From Setoptus koraiensis (Eukaryota > Animalia > Arthropoda): 64,000 bases of DNA. Both the position numbers and the translations under genes were made by a program. The DNA lies in contig CM106585.1 of NCBI GenBank assembly GCA_048013815.1, positions 14,818,001 to 14,882,000 of the forward strand. Direction: 5' to 3'. Positions within the stretch are counted from its first letter, which is position 1. The number at the start of each line of letters is the position of its first letter. Shown here piece after piece: positions 26,256 to 64,000 of the stretch. Below the pieces are notes generated by a model, which saw nothing but the letters and a program-made list of their open reading frames with translations, did no database searches and was not told where the DNA came from.

Positions 26256-26597
26256 ATAACAATGAGTGAACCATGAGTGATTGGAGACCAAAGAGGACAA
26301 TCATCTAGTTGTTATTTCTACTGTGTACATTTTCCAAATAACCAGTGACTTATTTGAAAGTCCGGCAGGGGCGCACGGAGCGCTTTAGACTGCGTGCACA
26401 AGCATAAAGTGTTAAATTAGATGTTTCTCTTCGTTGCTTACAAGCTTATTATACGCTGAAGCAAATAGATGCACGCGAATATTAACTACACGATGTATGA
26501 GAAAATCAAAGAGGGCTACCCTGACGGATCCGAGAGAAAGTAACAGGATGTGTATAGGAAAAAATGCACACAGCACAAATAAATGTTGCAATCAGCT

Positions 26598-26821
26598 GCT
26601 TTTCTCATGTTTATACGACACAGTCCATCCGGCATTTGAGTATATCCAGATGCTTTACAACTTTACCGAAAACTGGAGAAACTATTCTCTGTAGACCTCA
26701 AGTCTATGCCAAGATCCAATCATGTTTCAGGAACTATGGAATATTTGAAACAACATTTTCTGTCTTGTATTGTTTCGAAAATATCCGCGCTGCTATATTT
26801 ACCTTTGTAACGTATAAACAT
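26598..26821. repeat. Segment B (224 bp), direct copy at 28984-29207
   Basis: gcttttctcatgtttatacg...gtaacgtata is present at both loci (offset 2386), with two visible substitutions. Confidence 0.95.
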
Positions 26822-26824
26822 ACA

Positions 26825-28762
26825 ATGGTTATAATCAAACTACCCGAATCTGCGCCTCTCGATCCAGAGGATGAGGATTTCCTTGGCGTGATGAGTGAGA
26901 GCGAACCCGATGACGACGTAGATGATCTAGACTGGGAAGAGGTCAAGGCCAAAGACGATGACGACGATGAGGACGAGCTCGAGTTTAAAAGGATGCCCAT
27001 ATTGCCTGCCGAGGGTGTCGATATATTGATCGAGGACCATGGAAGTAGAAAGACAAAGAAGAAAAGAAAAGAGTTGGACCTGAATGAGATTGTGCGCAAG
27101 CATGTAAATAGGCAAAAAATTGCGTTGCAATTGAATAAACACAAACTCAGTCTTGTATTGTTTGTTGCCAGAGGATTGCGTTTATTGAAAATTGCCAGAT
27201 GTGATATAATAAGAGGTTTAGCTTTATCACTGGTGGATGATTGGTTTATGACACGTGCAAAATCTTCCACCACTATTAGTGACAAAAACAACAACAGCAA
27301 CAAAAAGGATACAATCGTCAGTAGTAAGCGGAAGACTAATGCGGCCAACAGCAAGAGGAAGGCCTCAGCTAGATCCTCAACAAAGAAGATTTGTCTCGAA
27401 GAGGAAATTGAAGATGTCACAGAGCAAGGAGAGAGTTCCACCGGTGAACGTGAATTTATTCTTGAATTCTTGGAATGGTTCAGCAAACGAGTGGCCATTT
27501 GTGACGATGACGACGTACGCGCGATGCACCTCAAAAATGCCTTCATGATCAATCTTCTCAATTGTTTCAGTGACCTACATGTGACCAGCCTCATCGAGCT
27601 TGTTTTAATATGTGCTGCCTGCTTGAAAGCTATAAAACCAAATCTACCTGTGAGAATTCTCAATATACTGCGTCCTATTACCAAGACGGCTAAACAGCCA
27701 GAAGAATCTGCTCCAGAACCCGCTGGAGTTCCAGAAAAACTCGATTTTTGGTTAGAGATATTCTCAGAGAGCGAAAACAAATGGATATGTGTTGACGTCT
27801 GCAACAATAAAATAGATGAACCAGAAGTTCTCAATGAACTCAACAAGCCCTTTTATTATTTGCTCTCGTTTGATATCGACCGCAATTGTATCAAACCAGC
27901 GGAGCAATACTATTGTCCAGATTGGTATGCACCAGCCTTCAAGCGCGAACGTTGCGATCCCAAATGGTGGCAGATGATCCTGGATGCCTACGGACCCTCA
28001 AAACAAAATGAAAAAGATGGTGCAGATGAGGCAAAATCTCAACAACTTCTAAACAAACAAGATCTACCTAAATCGGACAACGCATTCAGAAATCATCCTC
28101 TATACGTTCTACAGAAACACTTATTGAAGTACCAAGTGATTTATCCCCCAGATTGTGTGCCTGTTGGCTACTTCAAAGATGAGCCCATTTATCCTAGAGA
28201 TAGTGTTCACACATGTAGATCTCGCGAAACCTGGTTGCGTCAAGCGAAATCGGTGAAATTAGGCGAACAGCCCTACAAAATAGTTAAAGCACGCCCTAAA
28301 AAGGATAGATACACTGGCGATTATGTCAAAGACCTCCCATTGGAAATCTTTGGTGAATGGCAAACCGAAGCTTATGATCCACCAACCGCGCAGGATGGTA
28401 AAGTACCGCGTAATATTTATGGAAACGTTGATATGTATCAGCCATGCATGTTACCAAAAGGTTGTGTTCATTTAAAATTACCTGGCTTGCAAAAGATCGC
28501 CAATAAGTTAAATATAGACATTGCTGCTGCTGTCATAGGGTTCGATAGCCATTGCGGAGGTTATGGTTCTCATCCGGTAACTGACGGTTTTATAGTTTGC
28601 GAGGAGTACCAGGACACTCTGGAGGCAGCCTGGGATGAAGAGCAGATCAATGCTAGGAAGCGAGAGGAGGAAAAGCGCCAAAAGAGAATCTGGGACAACT
28701 GGAAGCGACTTTTGAAGGCAGCCATTATACGAGAAAAATTACGTGTTAAATACAAGGATTAA
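26825..28762 (+). CDS. XPC: XPC/Rad4 DNA-damage recognition protein, short copy (645 aa, internal 174-aa in-frame deletion)
   Basis: Near-identical to 30772-33231. Has LDFWLEIFSESENKWICVD, FRNHPLYVLQKHLLKYQ and VPRNIYGNVDMYQPCMLPKGCVHL (BHD1-3). The frame is also open to an upstream ATG at 26564 through segment B. Confidence 0.88.
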   Translation: MVIIKLPESAPLDPEDEDFLGVMSESEPDDDVDDLDWEEVKAKDDDDDEDELEFKRMPILPAEGVDILIEDHGSRKTKKKRKELDLNEIVRKHVNRQKIALQLNKHKLSLVLFVARGLRLLKIARCDIIRGLALSLVDDWFMTRAKSSTTISDKNNNSNKKDTIVSSKRKTNAANSKRKASARSSTKKICLEEEIEDVTEQGESSTGEREFILEFLEWFSKRVAICDDDDVRAMHLKNAFMINLLNCFSDLHVTSLIELVLICAACLKAIKPNLPVRILNILRPITKTAKQPEESAPEPAGVPEKLDFWLEIFSESENKWICVDVCNNKIDEPEVLNELNKPFYYLLSFDIDRNCIKPAEQYYCPDWYAPAFKRERCDPKWWQMILDAYGPSKQNEKDGADEAKSQQLLNKQDLPKSDNAFRNHPLYVLQKHLLKYQVIYPPDCVPVGYFKDEPIYPRDSVHTCRSRETWLRQAKSVKLGEQPYKIVKARPKKDRYTGDYVKDLPLEIFGEWQTEAYDPPTAQDGKVPRNIYGNVDMYQPCMLPKGCVHLKLPGLQKIANKLNIDIAAAVIGFDSHCGGYGSHPVTDGFIVCEEYQDTLEAAWDEEQINARKREEEKRQKRIWDNWKRLLKAAIIREKLRVKYKD

Positions 28763-30771: not shown

Positions 30772-33231
30772 ATGGTTATAATCAAACTACCCGAATCTGC
30801 GCCTCTCGATCCAGAGGATGAGGATTTCCTTGGCGTGATGAGTGAGAGCGAACCCGATGACGACGTAGATGATCCAGACTGGGAAGAGGTCAAGGCCAAA
30901 GACGATGACGACGATGAGGACGAGCTCGAGTTTAAAAGGATGCCCATATTGCCTGCCGAGGGTGTCGATATATTGATCGAGGACCATGGAAGTAGAAAGA
31001 CAAAGAAGAAAAGAAAAGAGTTGGACCTGAATGAGATTGTGCGCAAGCATGTAAATAGGCAAAAAATTGCGTTGCAATTGAATAAACACAAACTCAGTCT
31101 TGTATTGTTTGTTGCCAGAGGATTGCGTTTATTGAAAATTGCCAGATGTGATATAATAAGAGGTTTAGCTTTATCACTGGTGGATGATTGGTTTATGACA
31201 CGTGCAAAATCTTCCACCACTATTAGTGACAAAAACAACAACAGCAACAAAAAGGATACAATCGTCAGTAGTAAGCGGAAGACTAATGCGGCCAACAGCA
31301 AGAGGAAGGCCTCAGCTAGATCCTCAACAAAGAAGATTTGTCTCGAAGAGGAAATTGAAGATGTCACAGAGCAAGGAGAGAGTTCCACCGGTGAACGTGA
31401 ATTTATTCTTGAATTCTTGGAATGGTTCAGCAAACGAGTGGCCATTTGTGACGATGACGACGTACGCGCGATGCACCTCAAAAATGCCTTCATGATCAAT
31501 CTTCTCAATTGTTTCAGTAACCTACATGTGACCAGCCTCATCGAGCTTGTTTTAATATGTGCTGCCTGCTTGAAAGCTATAAAACCAAATCTACCTGTGA
31601 GAATTCTCAATATACTGCGTCCTATTACCATGAGGGCCGATATCATACCAAAGAACGCCAACAACGTAACTCAGGATATTAACGAGAGTATTTTTGGCGA
31701 TCAATCAACTAGCAACTGTGTAGAACAATCAAAGAAGGAAAAAGATGCACCGCCGTCAATTGAAGAAAATCATTCCTCGCATCTCCTCACCGACGGCCAG
31801 AGAAAACTCGATATCGACTTTTTAATCGTTTCCAATTTAGACATGGCCCCAGAAAGTTCGGAAAAGGCTAAGAAAGTGTCCACATCTAAGAAGGTGAAGA
31901 AACCTGAGCCACATGAGCAGGAACCAATCAAAGAGCCCACCAAGCGGAGAACCTCCAGAGTTACTAAGGTCAAGAGTGAAACGTATCGAGAGGCTCCCGA
32001 GGTCGAGGAAGAAGATGAGCCTAGGGCAAAAAGGAGAATCAGCAAAGCCAAACCAAAGACAGATACTAAGAAGGGTAAGAAAAATATCAGTGATGACGAA
32101 GAAGAAGTTAACAAAACTAAAAAAAGGAATAGTGATACGAAATCAAGCAAAAAGACGGCTAAACAGCCAGAAGAATCTGCTCCAGAACCCGCTGGAGTTC
32201 CAGAAAAACTCGATTTTTGGTTAGAGATATTCTCAGAGAGCGAAAACAAATGGATATGTGTTGACGTCTGCAACAATAAAATAGATGAACCAGAAGTTCT
32301 CAATGAACTCAACAAGCCCTTTTATTATTTGCTCTCGTTTGATATCGACCGCAATTGTATCAAACCAGCGGAGCAATACTATTGTCCAGATTGGTATGCA
32401 CCAGCCTTCAAGCGCGAACGTTGCGATCCCAAATGGTGGCAGATGATCCTGGATGCCTACGGACCCTCAAAACAAAATGAAAAAGATGGTGCAGATGAGG
32501 CAAAATCTCAACAACTTCTAAACAAACAAGATCTACCTAAATCGGACAACGCATTCAGAAATCATCCTCTATACGTTCTACAGAAACACTTATTGAAGTA
32601 CCAAGTGATTTATCCCCCAGATTGTGTGCCTGTTGGCTACTTCAAAGATGAGCCCATTTATCCTAGAGATAGTGTTCACACATGTAGATCTCGCGAAACC
32701 TGGTTGCGTCAAGCGAAATCGGTGAAATTAGGCGAACAGCCCTACAAAATAGTTAAAGCACGCCCTAAAAAGGATAGATACACTGGCGATTATGTCAAAG
32801 ACCTCCCATTGGAAATCTTTGGTGAATGGCAAACCGAAGCTTATGATCCACCAACCGCGCAGGATGGTAAAGTACCGCGTAATATTTATGGAAACGTTGA
32901 TATGTATCAGCCATGCATGTTACCAAAAGGTTGTGTTCATTTAAAATTACCTGGCTTGCAAAAGATCGCCAATAAGTTAAATATAGACATTGCTGCTGCT
33001 GTCATAGGGTTCGATAGCCATTGCGGAGGTTATGGTTCTCATCCGGTAACTGACGGTTTTATAGTTTGCGAGGAGTACCAGGACACTCTGGAGGCAGCCT
33101 GGGATGAAGAGCAGATCAATGCTAGGAAGCGAGAGGAGGAAAAGCGCCAAAAGAGAATCTGGGACAACTGGAAGCGACTTTTGAAGGCAGCCATTATACG
33201 AGAAAAATTACGTGTTAAATACAAGGATTAA
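30772..33231 (+). CDS. XPC: XPC/Rad4 DNA-damage recognition protein, full-length copy (819 aa), intronless CDS
   Basis: Acidic N-terminus, a transglutaminase-like domain split by a K/E/R-rich disordered loop, BHD1-3 motifs, and a C-terminal helix (WDNWKRLLKAAIIREKLRVKY). Confidence 0.96.
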   Translation: MVIIKLPESAPLDPEDEDFLGVMSESEPDDDVDDPDWEEVKAKDDDDDEDELEFKRMPILPAEGVDILIEDHGSRKTKKKRKELDLNEIVRKHVNRQKIALQLNKHKLSLVLFVARGLRLLKIARCDIIRGLALSLVDDWFMTRAKSSTTISDKNNNSNKKDTIVSSKRKTNAANSKRKASARSSTKKICLEEEIEDVTEQGESSTGEREFILEFLEWFSKRVAICDDDDVRAMHLKNAFMINLLNCFSNLHVTSLIELVLICAACLKAIKPNLPVRILNILRPITMRADIIPKNANNVTQDINESIFGDQSTSNCVEQSKKEKDAPPSIEENHSSHLLTDGQRKLDIDFLIVSNLDMAPESSEKAKKVSTSKKVKKPEPHEQEPIKEPTKRRTSRVTKVKSETYREAPEVEEEDEPRAKRRISKAKPKTDTKKGKKNISDDEEEVNKTKKRNSDTKSSKKTAKQPEESAPEPAGVPEKLDFWLEIFSESENKWICVDVCNNKIDEPEVLNELNKPFYYLLSFDIDRNCIKPAEQYYCPDWYAPAFKRERCDPKWWQMILDAYGPSKQNEKDGADEAKSQQLLNKQDLPKSDNAFRNHPLYVLQKHLLKYQVIYPPDCVPVGYFKDEPIYPRDSVHTCRSRETWLRQAKSVKLGEQPYKIVKARPKKDRYTGDYVKDLPLEIFGEWQTEAYDPPTAQDGKVPRNIYGNVDMYQPCMLPKGCVHLKLPGLQKIANKLNIDIAAAVIGFDSHCGGYGSHPVTDGFIVCEEYQDTLEAAWDEEQINARKREEEKRQKRIWDNWKRLLKAAIIREKLRVKYKD

Positions 33232-54982: not shown

Positions 54983-55315
54983 AGTCGCACATGACCTATG
55001 GCGGTGGCGAAATAGTTCGCGACTACCACTATATGGTATACGAGAGAGAGAGAGAGAGAGAGACTGTATGGTATTTGAGAGATACACACAAACACGATAC
55101 TGTTGCCATCACAATGTGTATGCGCCGATCTTATTTGATATCTCAGCAGCGCACCACATCACAGCTCACTGGGTGTAAAATGTCACTACATATGTTTGTG
55201 CCGTATACAGCCGTGTAAAATGTCTAATAGATAAATGAATTGCCGTCTCGACTTCGTTGGTGCGCGTTTGCTATTTATCCCACAAACACAACAAATAATT
55301 ACAACCAGTCTAGTC

Positions 55316-58300
55316 ATGCTCGTTCTGGCCTCGGACGCCGCTCACACGGGCTACGGATCCATCACCAACAACCCGGGCCCCATTGCCAAGGGCCAGCAGG
55401 CGGCCGGCAAGTACCAGACGTTCTCGCAAAACAAGCGCCGCAGCAGCCTCAACAGGAGCCCCACCAAGTCGCCCATGGACAAACAGCAGCCGGCCAAGCC
55501 CGGCCAAACCAGTCAGCATGTCAATCAAAACGAAGAGGACGAAATGGAAATATACGGCTACGAGCCAGCCTACTTTTGCACCTTTGTTACCTGGTTGGCC
55601 ATAGTGGCCACGCTGTTGTTGCTGCGCTTGGTGTTCTTTTGGAAGCCCCACTGGATGTTGTATTGCACCCATCGTCGGTGTTCGTTATTAAAGGCGAAAA
55701 AGGTGCTACTAATAGACAAATACAACCAGTACTTTGTTGAGACCATTCACTCGCTGGAGCCCGTGATGATGCCAGCAACAACAAGAAAATCGTCCTTGCT
55801 GCACCATGACCACGCGCACGACGCCTACTTGCCCGGCTCTAGTCCGCTTCCCGACGACGCCTACAACTCGACGGATATATTGCCCGATTTTGATTCTGTC
55901 TCGTATTCGGATGGCCCGTCGGCCGACGATCTGATGACTAACGCCTCAACAAAAAGTTGCACACCAAACGCCAACAAGCTGTGCTGTGGCTGGACAGACG
56001 ACACTAGCGCAATGAAATTTTTTGAAAACAAAAAATTGCGCTACGTTTGGGACAAACAAAAGCAAACGTTCGTCAAATTATACGGCCTAGACAAGGACGT
56101 CAGTCTATCGAAATTGTTACGCAATTGCGACGGCCTGTCCGCCGAGCAACAACAACTCAAGAGGCGACTGTACGGCGACAACGCCATTCACGTTGAAGTT
56201 GAGCCGTATTTCAAGATTCTCGTCGAGGAGGTGCTAGGTCCATTTTACATATTTCAGCTGTTCAGCATAACAATTTGGTTTCTTGACGACTATTATTACT
56301 ATGGCGCTTGCATTATAGTTATGTCAATATTGTCGCTAGTGTCGGGCGTTGTACAAATCAGAAAGAACCAACAACAATTGCGCGACACAGTGGAATCCGT
56401 TGATTACGTCAAGGTGTGCAGAGGCAACAACCAATACGAAGAGGTTGAATCGTCGCAAATTGTGCCTGGCGACATTGTTGTAATACCCACCTTTGATGCA
56501 GTGTTACAATTTGACGCAATACTGCTCAATGGTAACGTTATTGTCAACGAATCCATGCTAACAGGCGAAAGTGTTCCCATCACCAAGACACCGTTGACGC
56601 TCAGCCTCATCAATCACCAGCACAACCATCATCAGGCAACAAGTGCACAAGCAACCGACTCAAGCGACTGTTACGACCCAAAAGAACATGGCAAACATAC
56701 GCTATTTTGCGGAACAAAGGTGCTACAAACCAGATATTATGGGGGCGCGCACGTCAGGGCGCTCGTCATTCGGGTGGGCTTTCAAACAACAAAGGGCGAA
56801 CTCATCAGATCCATCATGTTCCCCAAGCCGGTCGACTTTCGTTTCAACAAACAAATCCATCGCTTCATTGGCCTGCTGGCCTGTCTCGCCATTATGGGAT
56901 TCCTCTACACGGTCATTCTGAAAACTAGCCGGGGTGCCTCGTTTCATTCAATTGTGATCGGAGCACTAGACCTGATAACCATCACGGTGCCGCCCGCGTT
57001 GCCCGCCGCCATGACCATCGGCATTATATACGCCCAGTCGAGATTGAAGAAAAAGAAAATCTATTGCATCAGTCCGCGTAGTATCAACATTAGCGGTTGC
57101 ACTAATTGTGTTTGTTTCGACAAAACGGGCACACTTACAGAAGATCATCTCAGCTTCAACGAGGTAGTGCCCATTTTGGAGGCCAAGTGCCAATTCAGCG
57201 AACCAATCGATCAAAGTGTCATAGATCAATCGTCGGCCACCTCGATACGTTCTCAGCAGCGCCAGCCCCACGACGACAACAAGTTCAATGTGAAAAATGA
57301 AATTGGCGACTATTCGCCCCTCATCGTTTGCCTGGCATCGTGCCATTCGTTGACCATCATCGACCAGAAGCTCATTGGGGACCCGCTGGATTTGCAAATG
57401 TTCGAGGCCACGGGCTGGACTTTGGAGGAGCCCGATGTCGACGACGAGAACAAGTTTGATTTGTTGGCGCCCAGCATAGTGAAGCCACCTAGAAAGAGCA
57501 GCGCTGCCACCATTGCCGGAGCACCGGCGTCCGGATATTTGTCCGCCTCGTCGGCCTCTAACAGCAGCAGCGACGAAGATCTCGCCAACATAAAGCGCTC
57601 TGGACAAGATGTGGGCATACTGAGACAATTTCCCTTTTCCTCTAGTTTACAACGGATGTCTATCATAACGAGACGCTTTGGCGCAAATCAATTTGTTGTT
57701 TATTCCAAAGGAGCCCCGGAGAAAATTGCCTCGTTGTGCGATCCTGACACAGTGCCCGATGATTTTAGTGATGTTCTCATGAAATACACCCGCAAAGGCT
57801 TCAGAGTTTTGGCGCTCGCCTACAGGCCCCTAACGCCCGGCTTGAGCTACCCAAAGATGCAGCGGGCCACCAGAAACGACATAGAGAAAGATCTCAGATT
57901 TTTGGGCTTCTTGACTCTTGGCAACAAACTAAAACCGGAAACAACGGGAGTAATCAAGATATTGAACGATGCCAACATCAGAAGCGTAATGGTGACAGGC
58001 GACAACATACTGACCGCAATCAGTGTAGCAAAGGAATGTAGAATGATATCGCCACAGGATCGTGTTGCGCTGCTTCAAGTGGACAAAAAGGACCTGAAGA
58101 ACAGGAAGTTGTTGCAACAGCAACAGTCGGCCGCGGCAGTGGCCGACCAGCAGGCGCCAACAGGCATAAGCGACAGCTCGGTCGTGCTGAATGTTAAAGA
58201 TATTGAAATTAAAATGATGGCAAGACAGTTGCAGTCGAGCAACAGCGACAATGTATCGTCGGGATCATACAGCAACAAAATTGCTGTTGCAGCGCGACCG

Positions 58301-59871
58301 CGTCTCACCTGGCACTACATCAGCCAGGATGGCGACGATCAAGAGGACAATGACGACACTAATGAGCAAACTTACTATGGCGAGGGTCTGGTCAGTATTA
58401 GATTTCGTGATAGCGACAGAATACATTTGGCCCTGTCAGGCGAAACCTGGCAAGTTGTGCGCGATCATTATCCCGAATTGTTGGACGCTGTGTGTGTCAG
58501 GGGCACAGTGTTTGCCAGGATGGCACCAGATCAAAAGCAACAATTAGTTGAACATTTACAAAAGATGCAATATTACGTAAGCATGTGCGGCGATGGCGCC
58601 AACGACTCGGGCGCGCTACGGGCCGCTCACACGGGTATTTCATTGTCGGACACAGAGGCCTCAGTTGCGGCTCCCTTCACGTCGGCTAACGCAAACATAT
58701 CTTGTGTGCCCATACTAATTAGCGAGGGTAGAGCGGCTCTGGTGACCGCATTTGGTATACTTAAGTACATGGCATTGTACAGTTTGATACAGTTTTGTTC
58801 GGTGATTATTTTGTACACGTTGTATTCAAATTTAACTGACATGGAGTTTCTCTACGAAGATTTGTTTATTATCACTTTGTTTGTTGCGCTGTTTAGTCGC
58901 ACTGAACCACACACTAGCCTAGATAAGAAGCCCCCGTCGTCGTCATTATTATCATTCACACAAATATCGTCGGTGGCCATCCAATTGGTTCTAGTTATAC
59001 TCTTTCAAATATTATCGTGTGTCTTATTGTGGCAACAGGACTGGTATCATGCTCACGACCCTGAATACGACAAGGAGCTTGTAGATCATGACAATTATGC
59101 CGTCTTTGGCGTGTCAGTTTTTCAATACATAACATTGGCCATAGTTTTCTCAAAGGGAAGACCCTACCGGAAGCCAATTTACACCAATTGTGAGTTGTCT
59201 TTTTGCTGCCACACCCCCACATTTTGCCGTACATCAAAAAATTGAGATTCAATGACTTATTATTATTCAAATATTCCTTCTACTTTCCCATCATCATCAT
59301 CACCCTCCACCTAATAGATCTTTTTATAATTGCATTAGTGCTGATGACAATTTTGACAATCATAATACTTATCATTCCCGCCGAGTGGAATGTTCCTTTC
59401 ATATCTGTAAGTACTCTTGCCTTGTCTGTTTATGTTGTCTCTCTCATATGATCGACGCAACAACAATGAGCGCTTGACAATCAATTAATCAATCTATCAC
59501 TGTATCATTTATCACGATCAACAGTTGGAAGTTACAGGTGTGCCTTTGAAATTCAGGATGCTCATAGTTGGCATCGCCTTGGTTCAATATGTTGTTTCAA
59601 TGATAGGCGAGGTTAGTACGAAGCACAACTACATCAACTAAACGACATACAATTAGTACAACTACTAACCATCTCTTTTTAACAACAAAAACCCACAATC
59701 CACTGACAATCCATTGAGCAGCGTTTCATTGTGGATCATCTAATATTCAAGAAGAGCAAGAAATTCTTCGAGGCCTTTGGATCGAAACCTAATGGAACTA
59801 TTTTCGAAATAGTAGATCGTGAGACACAATCCATGAGATGGTTATCCGGGTGTGCTAGCGAAATTTCCTGA
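55316..59871 (+). CDS. P5B-type ATPase (ATP13A2/ATP13A3-like, probable polyamine transporter); exons 55316-59189, 59318-59406, 59525-59611, 59722-59871; ~1399 aa
   Basis: EVLGPFYIFQ, NESMLTGES, the P5B signature PPALP, phosphorylation motif DKTGT (57119), KGAPEKI, VTGDN and MCGDGANDSGAL. Three phase-compatible GT-AG introns complete the C-terminal TM helices. Confidence 0.95.
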
Positions 59872-60239
59872 TATTTGCTAAAAGACCTCTCTGATGAATG
59901 TCTTACTAAAGTTCTGTGTTTAATAAAGTTCATGTCGACACCACACCGGCATATTGTAAAATCAATTCTTCTGCTGTTGTTTGTTGGCGCCGTTTATCCT
60001 CAATTAATGTGTGCCACTATCCACCTCACACGATATACGCTACGTGATGGTTGATTATCACTCATTATGTTTTTTTTTTATTATTTGTTATTAAATTATT
60101 TGCAACATCTATTGCTGGCTATTGGACTATGTGCATAACACACAAGCAAATTATTAGTTATTTGAGGCAATTAGTTGATTGGTTGGTTGAATTGTGTTGT
60201 GTGTCGCTTTGTGCAACTCAGCAACTCAGCAAACCAATC

Positions 60240-63060
60240 TCAAGAAAACGGCCGATTGGTGGATCCTAATTGATGGCGGCCACCGCTCATCTTGCTAGGT
60301 GGTGCTCTGTCTAGACTCAAGTCGCAAGCAACGGCGCTTGATATAGGCGAACAAGTTATTGTCTGTTGTTGTTGCAGTTGTAGTTGCTGTTGTTGCTGCT
60401 GCATAATGTTCATCATGGTAGCAACATGACTGTTACCACCAACTGCGAATAGTTGATTGATTGCATAATTTACGACTCCATTGTGATCTGGCGATAAGTC
60501 ATTACTATTGTCTAGGTTGATGTTGTCGCTGATGTTGTTGGCGCCAAGCAGACAATCAGAACCGTTTTGGTTAGTTGTAGCCATAGGATTGAGATAATAT
60601 TGATTCATTGCCATAGAAGTTAGTGCACCCAGCGACAGTTGCACCGCCATGGAGTGGTCAACCGATGACCATGGACGCCAGACAGGTGAGCCCATCACCT
60701 TGTCATCGACACCTGTTGTAGTTTGCTGTTGTTGTCGTTGTTGGTTCCTCGTGTCCTGCTGTTGCTGTTCAGTGGTCGGGTCATTAGTTTCATTGGGGCC
60801 CTCGCGGCGCTCTCTGGCGCATCTAGCCATGTTACAGACTACACATTGGCATGAAGGTGAGCCATATAGGCATGTAAACAATATAGGTTTGTTGTTTAGT
60901 TTTTCAGATAGACAGAAGGAAGAGAGAAAAGGAGGGAGGGAGAGAGTTCAAACAGCATGCGTTACGTAATATGTTAGAAATTTTTGTGTTTGTTTAGTGT
61001 GTTAATGTTGGCAAAGTTGGTGGTTTGGGTAAAAGAAAAATAGGCACGTTCGTGCCATTTCAATCAATCACAGATTAACCATTAGCCAACAAGGATATTC
61101 TGTTATTGTTAGCGCTGTTGCCATTACTCTTGTCGCTGCTATTACAACCATGATCATTATGGCAATTGTTGTGTGTAAATCATAATTATAATTGTATTAG
61201 AGTTATAGAGAGTTGTTAGTTGTGTGACTTGTGTGCCAGTTATTGGCCATATTGCCCAACAAACAAACTAGCCATGATTTGATTTGATTGTTCTCAGAGC
61301 CAAAGCTGTTGAGCGTTACAAGCAACAACACAAAATAGTCTCCTTGTTATATAACAACGACTCATTTAGCATTTAACAGACAAGTATAACTAATTTAAGC
61401 ATGCACTGTTTTATGCCCAATTTCTTTCTCTCTTTGCTAGATTCAACCAATAACATACAACAACAGTAAATGTCGATGCTTCAATAATGGTACTAATAAT
61501 CATAGAAACAACAACCAGCGATAACAAATTTTCTAAACAAGAAATACATTAAAAGAAAAAAGAAATATTATTATAGTTGCTCTACTGTGTTTCGGCGCTG
61601 CGTCTGATTGCTCACCGAAAAGACGGCAAAGGGTTAGCAAAAACATTGCCCAAAGAGTTTAGCTGCCATAGTAGCACCATCTTGATTCATCCTCCTTGTT
61701 CTCAAGTTAAATAAAATAAACACTTACAAGCTAACACAAACTAGCACTTATGCGATAATAAAATAAAACAAAATAAATAAGTGAATTCGCTGCTGAATGG
61801 CCTCACTAGTTTGTCTGGTATCTTTTGGCTTTTCGCATCACAAAATCAGCGGTGATTGAATCGAGTTTCGAGGATTGACTTCATTACTTCTAATAAACTC
61901 ACCTTTTTCAACCTCTTCTCTCGTGATAGCCTCTCTGGCGGTTTTGCGCTGTTCCTCATTTAGATTTCTGTCCTCCTTCATTGCTCTGCGCATTTTGATC
62001 TGAAGACGATTTACTTCATTGCGTATAAAATGTACCTCGCAATCGAAACAATTGTCGCGTTGAAAGTGGCGCTCCTGTCCGAATCCGCAACTTCTCACAT
62101 GACCTTGTCATCGTCGTTTATAGTTTATATTCATCATGGTACAGAACGTAATTGATTATTTAGATATATCCGCAATTATGATATGTACACTACCGCTGAC
62201 ACAATTTAGAGTTTGTTAGCTTGTATCTTGGCTCATTAGCTCTGAATCTGTCGCTGAAAACCTCACCTTTTCTTAATATTTTGACGCCATGATTCTGACA
62301 GTATCCACAATTGGGGTCCTTTTTGGTGCCTTTGAGTTTTGTCTCCTTACCGCTAATCACTTGCAGGATGTCGCTTGTCGATAAGAGCAAATATGTTGTT
62401 GTGGTTTTAGATTAAAATTTAGTTGGACTTGATTAGTGGATTTGTTGATTGTTGTCGGTGATTTGCGCTCAATTTATAAAAAATTACCTTCTAGCATCCA
62501 ACAGGCGACATCTTAGGCACATGCACTTTTTGAATGGGCAATCTCTGGCGTGACCTGTAAATTTTCAATATATTTACGTTGACAAACCGGTAAGGTAAAT
62601 GAATTAGGCTCTCGGTGATAGATTCTCGATCTCGCGTATCGGTTTTGAGATGCTCGAGATCGAAATAGCTTCTGAGGCTCGACAAAAAGAGGACGAAAAG
62701 CGATTCCGCTATGCCGTTGTCAAGCAAGCAAGAGCTCGATCGCACGAATTTGAACAACACACTCAAATACGTTACAGCAAGAATTATTACAAGCTTAAAG
62801 TGCTCCAATTAAGAGTGAATCAAAATTACGGTAACTACTAACAGGAAGAGGTGAGACCTAAATTTGCGGAATCTAGTTTGTTAGATCAAGAAATTCGTCA
62901 ACTTGAGGAGCACGAGCGCCACGATTGGTTGGATGTTATAGCCTATAAATAGCTTACCTTTTTTGAGCACCTCAAAGTCATGATTTTGACATTTGCCACA
63001 CTTGTTTCCATTGTCGCAATCGAATTCTCTGCTGCTACTGCTCATGTTGCTAGGCCACAT
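60240..63060 (-). CDS. DM-domain (doublesex/mab-3-related) transcription factor with two tandem DM domains; exons 63060-62958, 62554-62488, 62373-62267, 62103-61903, 60838-60240; ~358 aa
   Basis: Spliced: ...CGKCQNHDFEVLKKG|HARDCPFKKCMCLRCRLLDAR|SDIL...PNCGYCQNHGVKILRKG|HVRSCGFGQERHFQRDNCFDCEVHFIRNEVNRLQIKMRRA...EK|VCNM...Q-rich tail. All four introns are GT-AG and the phases sum to 1077 nt. The DM exons are well supported; the start codon, exon-3 acceptor and last-exon link are less certain. Confidence 0.85.
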
Positions 63061-64000
63061 GATGATCTCACTGACAAGGGATATGGATTTGATTTGTTTA
63101 AAGAGACACGTGAAGTGGTGGTTATGACTAAGATAACGACAATGCTTCAAGAGGCTATCAGATTGCCGTCGAGAGTAGCTAGCTGACTTCAATTCAATTT
63201 GATTTAATCTCAATTATTAATAGGTTATATGGAATATGTAAATGTTGTTGACATCGGTCTATATTACTCTTGTCCACCTATAAACAATAATGTTTCATTT
63301 ATTTGATACTGTGAGTGGATAAATTGGATATTAGATATAACTATTATTATTATTGATGCATTAGTATTTGGAACCATCGACTGACTTGTTGCGTTGTTTG
63401 ATACAATGGTCACAATTAATCACAACTATTCACGAAGGGTAGAATAAAGAGGTGTAAAATTGCTGTTGTTTGTTGTACTTTTTTTTTCAATATGACTGCT
63501 GCTGTTGCTCGAATGTAAATTTGACGAGAGAACTGGATGTTCGATAAACTTCCGTCGGATTGTAGTGATCATATTTGATCAAGGTGTGATTAGTTTGAGT
63601 ATTAAACAACAAAACTATCATATAATATAATTACAAGTTGTACAATTGCTTGACTTCACTTGATATGTTACTTCTTGCACAATTCTATCAATGATTAGAC
63701 GTTCACGAAATCAAATTGTTGTGTGTTGTTCGTGATGTTTGCTGCAAACCTTTGTTTCCACCAATACAATCAATTGCTTGCTAACGCAATCAACAATAAT
63801 ACTCAAATGCCCAATTTTGTTTGTATAAATTGTTTAAAAACAAACAAATATCGTTTTTTTTTCTCTCTCACACGCTCCCTCTTTCATAGCAATTCATTGT
63901 GATCAGTCTTGTTAACGTTTTGAGTACTGGTGCCATCTAACGTTGTTATGCTATTGAACTATAATTAAATGATTGTTGCATGCGCGCAAACAACTGCGCA

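What the first reader, a model, noticed from the sequence alone, without database searches (positions are those of the whole stretch)
61903..63060. Cryptic MAB-3-like tandem double-DM-domain gene in an arthropod-type genome
Seen: four micro-exons (103, 67, 107 and 201 nt), each scattered in a different short ORF, splice in frame into two adjacent DM domains. DM1 has all eight canonical ligands (C-x2-C-x2-H-x8-H-x3-C-x4-C-x-C-x2-C) but no recognition-helix tail (LLDARSDILQVISGKE). DM2 carries the helix (R..V..LQIKMRRA). No dsx dimerisation domain or DMA domain is recognisable. Established: DM proteins are core sexual-development regulators; most have one DM domain, and the tandem form with a tail-less first domain and a QIK.RR second domain is characteristic of nematode MAB-3, with tandem forms uncommon in arthropods. 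Inference: a divergent, possibly lineage-specific sex-differentiation factor that reached a MAB-3-like single-chain dimer architecture.
Basis: partly seen in the sequence, partly recalled or inferred. Interest (0 to 1): 0.85.

Follow-up and report, generated by a model that had tools for sequence, protein, structure and literature searches.

The report
Tandem double-DM DMRT gene in mite
A real, strongly conserved five-exon gene of a plant-feeding eriophyoid-type mite encodes a DMRT-family transcription factor with two DNA-binding DM domains in one chain, an altered second zinc site and a probable Groucho co-repressor motif; this is a new variant of a known, uncommon arthropod gene type.

Summary
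On the minus strand, four exons of 103, 67, 107 and 201 nt, with GT donors and AG acceptors, splice in frame into two DM domains.

The best evidence is comparative. More than ten related species carry the same gene, and different species lack different introns. One ORF (P0133) holds exons 1-4 uninterrupted and scores 63.8 bits on Pfam DM in two stretches. This excludes two separate genes and mutually exclusive exon pairs.

Selection is strongly purifying: dN is 0.03-0.11 while dS is saturated.

This exon carries a conserved [VI]WRPWS island, the Groucho/TLE-binding motif type.

DM2 is not canonical. It has a fixed six-residue insertion with an invariant His, and the sixth Cys ligand is replaced by Asp, Glu or His.

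A housekeeping gene in the window places the genome nearest Fragariocoptes, an eriophyoid mite.

Two-DM DMRT genes are already reported in nematodes, ants, spiders and Malacostraca, so I class this as a new variant of a known kind.

No RNA data could be obtained, and a role in sex differentiation is untested.

The scan had noted this same stretch before (s1-333819, s1-325912).

The parts
62958..63060 (-). Exon 1 (103 nt): start codon at 63060 and the N-half of DM1 (C-x2-C-x2-H ... KK, then the first base of the Gly codon). Phase-1 donor G|gtaagc.
   Evidence: Fused in frame to exon 2 in L001 and in L009/P0133.
62555..62957 (-). Intron 1 (403 nt). It splits DM1 inside the Gly codon of K-G-H.
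   Evidence: Negative coding score in all frames. Absent in L001 and L009.
62488..62554 (-). Exon 2 (67 nt): C-half of DM1 (H-x3-C-x4-C-x-C-x2-C) and the start of the short helix (RLLDAR).
   Evidence: Pfam DM positions 20-40, 24.9 bits, E 1.8e-5 for this piece alone.
62374..62487 (-). Intron 2 (114 nt).
   Evidence: Absent in L002, L003, L005 and L009.
62267..62373 (-). Exon 3 (107 nt): a nearly invariant linker (SDILQVISGKETKLKGTKKDP) and the N-half of DM2.
   Evidence: Pfam DM positions 1-18, 17.6 bits. The linker is identical in the nine species aligned; P0133 has one K-to-R change.
62104..62266 (-). Intron 3 (163 nt). It splits DM2 at the same Gly codon as intron 1 splits DM1.
   Evidence: Absent in L001, L002, L009 and in P0134 and P0135.
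61903..62103 (-). Exon 4 (201 nt): rewired C-half of DM2 (H-x3-C, a 12-residue loop with an invariant His, C-x2-C), a long recognition helix (EVHFIRNEVNRLQIKMRRAMKE) and a charged tail.
   Evidence: 83-91% identical ORFs in many relatives. Loop statistics. The complete DM2 of L001 scores 29.8 bits against a Pfam cut-off of 27.
60839..61902 (-). Intron 4 (1064 nt), phase 1. Donor G|gtgagt, acceptor tgtgtag|.
   Evidence: Donor and acceptor sit at the same codon position in WIN, L001, L005, L009 and L011. Negative coding score.
60243..60838 (-). Exon 5 (596 nt, stop at 60243-60245): a Q-rich, fast-evolving C-terminal region. It opens with a basic stretch, VCNMARCARERR, whose first codon straddles the E4/E5 junction.
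   Evidence: In frame with exon 4, giving 357 aa. Coding score +0.14 bit per codon, other frames negative. Motifs conserved in six species.
60666..60683 (-). VWRPWS island (residues 212-217), a WRPW-type Groucho/TLE-binding motif.
   Evidence: [VI]WRPWS is the only invariant island in an otherwise barely alignable region, in WIN, L001, L005, L009, L011/L016 and L017.

Best explanation
Shown: this is a functional five-exon gene (minus strand, 60243-63060) encoding a 357-residue DMRT-family protein with two DM zinc modules in one chain. It is conserved under strong purifying selection in a clade of plant-associated mites related to Eriophyoidea.

Inferred mechanism: the protein is a sequence-specific DNA-binding transcription factor that works as a 'single-chain dimer', like nematode MAB-3.
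- DM2 supplies the long basic recognition helix (R..V...QIKMRR) that in DM proteins lies in the DNA minor groove.
- DM1 is a fully canonical zinc module with only a short helix. Together with the nearly invariant Lys-rich linker, it supplies the second, adjacent DNA contact.
- DM2's second zinc site is rebuilt. The canonical sixth Cys is replaced by Asp, Glu or His, and a fixed six-residue insertion carries an invariant His. Zinc is probably still bound, with a Cys2-His-(Asp/His) site.
- The C-terminal exon carries a conserved [VI]WRPWS peptide, the type of motif that recruits the Groucho/TLE co-repressor. The protein therefore most likely represses its targets.

By analogy with the family, its biological role is probably sex-specific or neural differentiation in a haplodiploid mite. 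This last step is the weakest.
For: One gene, all junctions real:
- L001 has E1+E2 and E3+E4 fused.
- L002 has E2+E3+E4 fused.
- L003 and L005 lack intron 2.
- L009/P0133 has E1-E4 in one ORF starting with Met.
- Every fusion is in frame exactly at the predicted joints.

DM membership:
- P0133 scores 63.8 bits on Pfam DM, E 1.3e-17, in two stretches.
- DM1 of L001 scores 48.9 bits and DM2 scores 29.8 bits, against a cut-off of 27.
- DM1 aligns to Dsx 1LPV (E 2.8e-8) and DMRT1 4YJ0 (E 9e-7).
- A DM1 profile built from relatives finds both modules in the window's spliced protein, at 97.4 and 24.3 bits.

Selection:
- Pairwise dN is 0.03-0.11 with dS above 1.2 or saturated.
- 110 of 141 codons are invariant in nine species.
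- In the relatives L010 and L011 a neighbouring DEAD-box helicase is 76% identical. By my own count from the translated exons, not a computed figure, their DM exons differ at only a handful of 141 positions.

Zinc site: in 20 distinct orthologous sequences the loop is always 12 residues, the loop His is 20/20, and the C6-equivalent is D16/E3/H1.

Fifth exon: the acceptor position, the basic start and [VI]WRPWS are conserved in six species.

Taxon: coatomer beta is 62% identical to Fragariocoptes setiger and about 50% to other acariform mites. One relative's contig is titled plant metagenome.
Against: - No RNA evidence. Four RNA runs gave zero reads on the locus and are no test, because the species label is probably the host plant's.
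- Exon 4 alone is not recognised as DM by Pfam, PDB sequence search or Atlas features.
- The AlphaFold model is of low confidence (mean pLDDT 57; the DM2 loop is below 50), so the ligand geometry could not be read. Foldseek found nothing significant.
- WRPW is usually C-terminal in HES proteins, whereas here it is internal.
- No paper linking DM proteins to WRPW/Groucho was found.
- DNA binding, zinc content, repression and any sex bias are untested.
Confidence: 0.7

Rival explanations
1. The two DM exon pairs belong to two separate genes, or are mutually exclusive alternatives, so no protein carries both domains.
For: Exon 1 could also be joined in frame directly to exon 4, since both are phase 1. 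No RNA data are available.
Against: In L002 exons 2-3-4 form one uninterrupted ORF. In L009/P0133 exons 1-4 form one ORF with both domains. The linker between the domains is nearly invariant.
Confidence: 0.02
2. It is a decaying pseudogene or a chance assembly of Cys/His-rich ORF fragments.
For: DM2 lacks one canonical Cys. No annotated protein exists in the collections.
Against: There are no stops or frameshifts in 1074 nt. The dN/dS ratio is about 0.01-0.08 with saturated dS. Introns are unalignable while exons are 85-95% identical. All splice signals are intact.
Confidence: 0.01
3. DM2 is a degenerate module that no longer binds the second zinc or DNA. The protein binds DNA through DM1 only, or acts as a non-DNA-binding partner or competitor of other DMRTs in the genome. 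The conserved helix would then serve protein contacts.
For: The canonical sixth Cys is lost and six residues are inserted. Exon 4 alone has no DM hit. The model has low confidence in this loop.
Against: The replacement residues are always metal-ligating types (D, E or H) and the inserted His is invariant. The helix keeps the canonical register, including the RR pair. The complete DM2 still passes Pfam's cut-off.
Confidence: 0.15
4. The gene is a DMRT with a role unrelated to sex, for example neural or segmental patterning, as is proposed for most non-Dsx arthropod Dmrt genes.
For: Panara et al. found no sex-related embryonic expression for most non-Dsx panarthropod Dmrt genes (PMC6604209). An earlier unchecked note reports separate doublesex-like genes elsewhere in this genome (s1-307604).
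Against: The two-DM proteins named in the papers read here have male-related expression or roles. MAB-3 is expressed male-specifically in C. elegans (PMC13089330). The malacostracan two-DM group includes the Y-linked Po-iDMY (PMC10252143; abstract of PMC12154352).
Confidence: 0.35

Closest known systems
Nematode two-DM-domain DMRTs (C. elegans MAB-3, DMD-3 and their group)
   Same: Two DM domains sit in one chain. The first lacks a basic helix tail and the second has a QIK.RR-type helix. The protein is small and has no DMA or DSX-dimer domain. Protein-language-model features place the mite protein nearest nematode DM clusters (score 0.85-0.89, a lead only).
   Different: The phylum is different and orthology was not tested, so convergence is as likely as common descent. 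As I recall the MAB-3 sequence (from memory, not checked here), both of its domains have canonical zinc ligands, whereas the mite DM2 has a rewired site II. I know of no WRPW in MAB-3 (also from memory).
Spider orphan two-DM genes (Parasteatoda Pt-Dmrt_like2; Oedothorax OgDmrt_g20232)
   Same: They are chelicerate genes with two DM domains in the same transcript and fall outside the four standard arthropod Dmrt classes (PMC6604209; bioRxiv 10.1101/2021.02.09.430505).
   Different: In Oedothorax a 5.7-kb intron separates the domains, whereas here a 22-residue linker does.
Malacostracan two-DM Dmrt group (iDmrt/iDMY of lobsters, crabs and prawns)
   Same: It is an arthropod Dmrt group defined by two DM domains (PMC10252143).
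   Different: It is described as specific to Malacostraca. Its relationship to the mite gene is untested.
Canonical single-DM proteins (Drosophila Dsx, PDB 1LPV; human DMRT1, PDB 4YJ0)
   Same: DM1 aligns over the whole zinc module with all eight ligands (E 2.8e-8 and 9e-7).
   Different: They have one DM domain and dimerise or oligomerise on DNA. They carry DSX-dimer or DMRT1-type C-terminal domains, which are absent here.
WRPW-type Groucho/TLE-dependent repressors (Hairy/HES, Ripply; Runt with VWRPY)
   Same: They share the tetrapeptide WRPW preceded by a hydrophobic residue. Here it is conserved as an island in a divergent region.
   Different: The DNA-binding domains are unrelated (bHLH, Runt). 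In HES proteins the motif is at the very C-terminus. The link to Groucho here is inference from established knowledge of the motif, not a test.

Membership tests
DM-domain / DMRT family (Pfam PF00751) | Score above Pfam's gathering threshold (27 bits). | tested here: met
   The ortholog P0133, with exons 1-4 in one ORF, scores 63.8 bits in two stretches. DM1 of L001 scores 48.9 bits and DM2 scores 29.8 bits. The window's spliced protein has no reference form and could not be submitted, but its half-domains score 24.9 and 17.6 bits alone.
DM-domain / DMRT family (Pfam PF00751) | Intertwined CCHC + HCCC zinc ligand pattern C-x2-C-x2-H-x8-H-x3-C-x4-C-x-C-x2-C. | tested here: met
   DM1 has all eight ligands at canonical spacing, invariant in nine species. 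DM2 has seven of eight. The sixth Cys is replaced by D, E or H after a six-residue insertion.
DM-domain / DMRT family (Pfam PF00751) | C-terminal basic recognition helix following the last Cys. | tested here: met
   The DM2 helix is in canonical register (R, V, Q, RR). Pfam aligns it to profile positions 1-44 of 47. Helix 100-124 appears in the low-confidence model. DM1 has only a short helix without the basic tail.
MAB-3-type two-DM proteins | Two DM domains in one polypeptide. | tested here: met
   Shown by fused ORFs in relatives and the in-frame splice model in the window.
MAB-3-type two-DM proteins | Common descent with the nematode group (phylogenetic grouping). | not tested
There is only an Atlas feature lead towards nematode clusters.
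Doublesex (Dsx) | C-terminal DSX dimerisation/UBA-like domain (PF08828). | tested here: not met
   Pfam finds no such hit on the exon-5 ORF of the window or of L001.
Dmrt93B / Dmrt99B (DMA-domain DMRTs) | DMA domain (PF03474) downstream of the DM domain. | tested here: not met
   Pfam finds no DMA hit on the exon-5 ORFs.
Groucho/TLE-recruiting repressors | WRPW (or a related) peptide that binds the Groucho WD40 domain. | tested here: met
   [VI]WRPWS is present and conserved in six species. Actual binding is not testable with these tools.

The most novel reading that the evidence does not exclude
A DMRT that has become a dedicated Groucho-dependent repressor built as a single-chain DM pair with a non-canonical (Cys2-His-Asp/His) second zinc site. 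It could serve as the sex-differentiation switch of haplodiploid eriophyoid mites. Alternative first exons, seen in some relatives as a second conserved DM N-half exon 2-3 kb upstream, could supply sex- or tissue-specific isoforms that differ within the DNA-binding domain itself.
Probability: 0.12. Interest if true: 0.7.

Novelty: new variant of a known kind. Interest (0 to 1): 0.45.

Why it matters
DMRT proteins are the one class of regulators used for sexual differentiation across animals. Nothing is known about them in eriophyoid mites, which are haplodiploid crop pests with the smallest arthropod genomes.

This gene has several unusual features:
- It keeps four introns in a lineage where about 84% of genes are intronless (PMC7738191).
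- By my count from the translated exons, it is more conserved than a neighbouring DEAD-box helicase in the one species pair where both could be compared.
- It shows a natural, conserved rewiring of a DM zinc site.
- It couples DM domains to a WRPW motif.

It therefore gives a concrete candidate for mite sex-differentiation studies. It is also a natural experiment on how much the DM zinc module tolerates change. It does not overturn anything known, because tandem DM genes already exist in several arthropod groups.

Tried and rejected
- RNA support. The look-up of sequencing runs on the locus found only three runs that hold introns as well, so they are DNA-like. RNA runs found through the RpS14 gene carry a species label that is probably the host plant's.
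- Exon-5 ORF against 5.8 billion proteins: no hit. The window's own proteins are not in the collection.
- Exon 4 alone: no match in Pfam, PDB or Atlas.
- The 787-aa hit P0008 is a repetitive protein that matches a short Cys/His stretch eleven times. I judged it spurious.
- AlphaFold2 on P0133 with a 17-row alignment gave mean pLDDT 57, too low to read the zinc geometry. Foldseek on that model put 1LPV first at E 4.9, which is not significant.
The repeat found only four loci, all at least 93% identical, so it says nothing about distant relatives.
- Paper searches for the run accessions, for Dmrt in Eriophoidea-type mites, and for WRPW with DM domains gave nothing relevant.
- Rfam and repeat scans of 59300-64000 found nothing.
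- The window's spliced 357-aa protein has no reference form. It was therefore analysed only in scripts and was not sent to Pfam, structure or database tools.
Full report
1. WHAT IS IN THE SEQUENCE

The feature lies on the minus strand.
- E1 62958-63060: 103 nt, ATG at 63060, donor G|gtaagc.
- E2 62488-62554: 67 nt, acceptor tttacag|, donor AG|gtaatt.
- E3 62267-62373: 107 nt, acceptor gacaag|, donor G|gtgagg.
- E4 61903-62103: 201 nt, acceptor gacaag|, donor G|gtgagt.

Joined, they give 159 codons plus one base with no stop.

DM1 (E1+E2) has the full ligand pattern C-x2-C-x2-H-x8-H-x3-C-x4-C-x-C-x2-C. DM2 (E3+E4) has C-x2-C-x2-H-x8-H-x3-C, then twelve residues, then C-x2-C. After that comes a helix whose R, V, Q and RR positions are in register with the canonical DM recognition helix.

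Both domains are split inside the same Gly codon of K-G-H.

In the six-frame translation of the whole window, the N-half motif occurs only at these two places. A codon-usage log-odds trained on the window's long genes is +0.25 bit per codon for the spliced frame. It is negative for the other frames and for every intron. Pfam recognises two of the half-domains on their own: E2 at 24.9 bits and E3 at 17.6 bits.

2. COMPARATIVE PROOF OF THE GENE MODEL

An exhaustive HMMER search with the exon-4 peptide returned eleven short ORF products that are 83-91% identical. A profile search returned 36. All come from unannotated Logan, ENA or JGI contigs.

I fetched the contigs as L001-L017. Every one carries the same gene with both DM domains in the same order. 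The introns are unalignable and differ in presence between species.
- L001 lacks introns 1 and 3.
- L002 lacks introns 2 and 3.
- L003 and L005 lack intron 2.
- L009 lacks introns 1, 2 and 3, so its product P0133 is exons 1-4 in a single ORF beginning with Met.
- L004, L006, L007 and L008 have all three.

Each fusion is in frame exactly at the junction predicted in the window.

Pfam results on relatives:
- P0133 scores 63.8 bits, E 1.3e-17, in two stretches.
- The intact DM1 of L001 scores 48.9 bits and its intact DM2 scores 29.8 bits, against a cut-off of 27.
- DM1 aligns to Dsx (1LPV, E 2.8e-8) and DMRT1 (4YJ0, E 9e-7).
- A DM1 profile built from the relatives finds both modules in the window's own spliced protein, at 97.4 and 24.3 bits.

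3. SELECTION

On a 141-codon alignment of nine species, pairwise dN is 0.03-0.11. dS is above 1.2 or too saturated to estimate, which gives a ratio of roughly 0.01-0.08. 110 of the 141 residues are invariant.

The most conserved stretch includes the linker SDILQVISGKETKLKGTKKDP.

In the pair L010/L011 a neighbouring DEAD-box helicase is 76% identical. By my own count from the translated exons, not a computed figure, the DM exons of that pair differ at only a handful of positions.

4. THE GENE IS LONGER THAN REPORTED

Exon 4 ends in phase 1 at a GT donor. About 1.06 kb downstream, an acceptor (tgtgtag|) opens a 596-nt exon at 60243-60838 that is in frame and runs to a stop. This gives a 357-residue protein.

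Its coding score is positive only in that frame. The acceptor sits at the same codon position in WIN, L001, L005, L009 and L011.

Two islands are conserved in an otherwise fast-evolving, Q-rich region of very variable length:
- a basic start, VC.MAR.A[RK][EK][RK]R;
- [VI]WRPWS.

Both are present in six species. WRPW preceded by a hydrophobic residue is the established Groucho/TLE-binding peptide of Hairy/HES and Ripply proteins; this is established knowledge, not tested here.

Pfam finds no DSX-dimer, DMA or other domain in this exon, and no homolog was found by sequence.

5. THE SECOND ZINC SITE

Aligning DM1 on DM2 places a six-residue insertion after the fifth ligand. It puts Asp where the sixth Cys should be.

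In 20 distinct orthologous sequences:
- the loop is always twelve residues;
- the His in G-Q-E-R-H-F is present in all 20;
- the C6-equivalent position is Asp in 16, Glu in 3 and His in 1, all metal-ligating residues;
- the E-V-H after the last Cys is invariant.

I infer that zinc site II is retained with altered ligands. AlphaFold2 could not help: mean pLDDT was 57 and the loop was below 50. Foldseek on that model was not significant.

6. WHOSE GENOME

The window's coatomer-beta ORF is 62% identical to Fragariocoptes setiger, an eriophyoid mite. It is about 50% identical to other acariform mites and 45-47% to other animals. One relative's contig is titled a plant metagenome assembly.

Eriophyoid genomes are about 32 Mb, about 84% of their genes are intronless, and sex determination is haplodiploid (PMC7738191). 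This explains the patchwork of intron losses. It also makes a gene that keeps four introns in about 1.1 kb of coding sequence unusual for its genome.

The RNA runs offered under the same species label gave no reads at all on the locus. They probably come from the host plant, so there is no transcript evidence.

7. COMPARISON WITH WHAT IS KNOWN

Two-DM DMRT genes are typical of nematodes, in the MAB-3/DMD-3 group (PMC13089330). In arthropods they are already reported for:
- ants and the spider orphan Pt-Dmrt_like2 (PMC6604209);
- Oedothorax OgDmrt_g20232 (bioRxiv 10.1101/2021.02.09.430505);
- a malacostracan group (PMC10252143).

The architecture is therefore uncommon but known.

I did not find the following described anywhere:
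- the conserved rewiring of DM2;
- a WRPW motif on a DM protein;
- any account of Dmrt genes in eriophyoids.

Protein-language-model features put the protein nearest nematode DM clusters (0.85-0.89). This is only a lead.

8. VERDICT

I class it as a new variant of a known kind, of moderate interest. The decisive missing piece is transcript and sex-specific expression data from the mite itself.

Noticed in passing
L011:6486-6530, L010:7767-7811, L005:3649-3693: In three relatives a second DM N-half exon (GNKCGKCQNH.[VI]EV.KKG) lies 2-3 kb upstream of exon 1. It sits at the end of a 96-170-codon open frame and has a phase-1 GT donor at the same Gly codon. Differences between species are mostly synonymous. 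It is probably an alternative first exon spliced to exon 2. It was not found in L017 (4 kb upstream read) or L001 (3 kb). In the window it would lie beyond base 64000.
   Followed up: partly
window 62555-62957: Intron 1 is 403 nt here but only about 90-180 nt in relatives that keep it. It contains a 63-codon plus-strand ORF (62650-62841) of unknown meaning.
   Followed up: no
window 26564-28762 and 30772-33231: Two near-identical long ORFs of an XPC/Rad4-like protein lie in tandem, one lacking an internal segment. This is visible in the ORF list and was also noted by earlier readers.
   Followed up: no
window 1-21300: There are many 120-235-codon ORFs overlapping on both strands, in GC-rich or CAA/CAG low-complexity sequence, without an obvious coding signature. 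Long ORFs alone are therefore weak evidence of genes in this genome.
   Followed up: no
P0008 (787 aa): A highly repetitive protein from an unrelated source matched exon 4 eleven times through a short F-x-C-E-[IV]-H-F stretch. I judged this a chance or low-complexity match.
   Followed up: no
L010 and L011, upstream of the DM gene: A DEAD-box helicase gene lies upstream of the DM gene in both relatives, which is local synteny. The window has a P5-type ATPase on the other side (55235-59245), and its upstream side is cut by the window end.
   Followed up: partly
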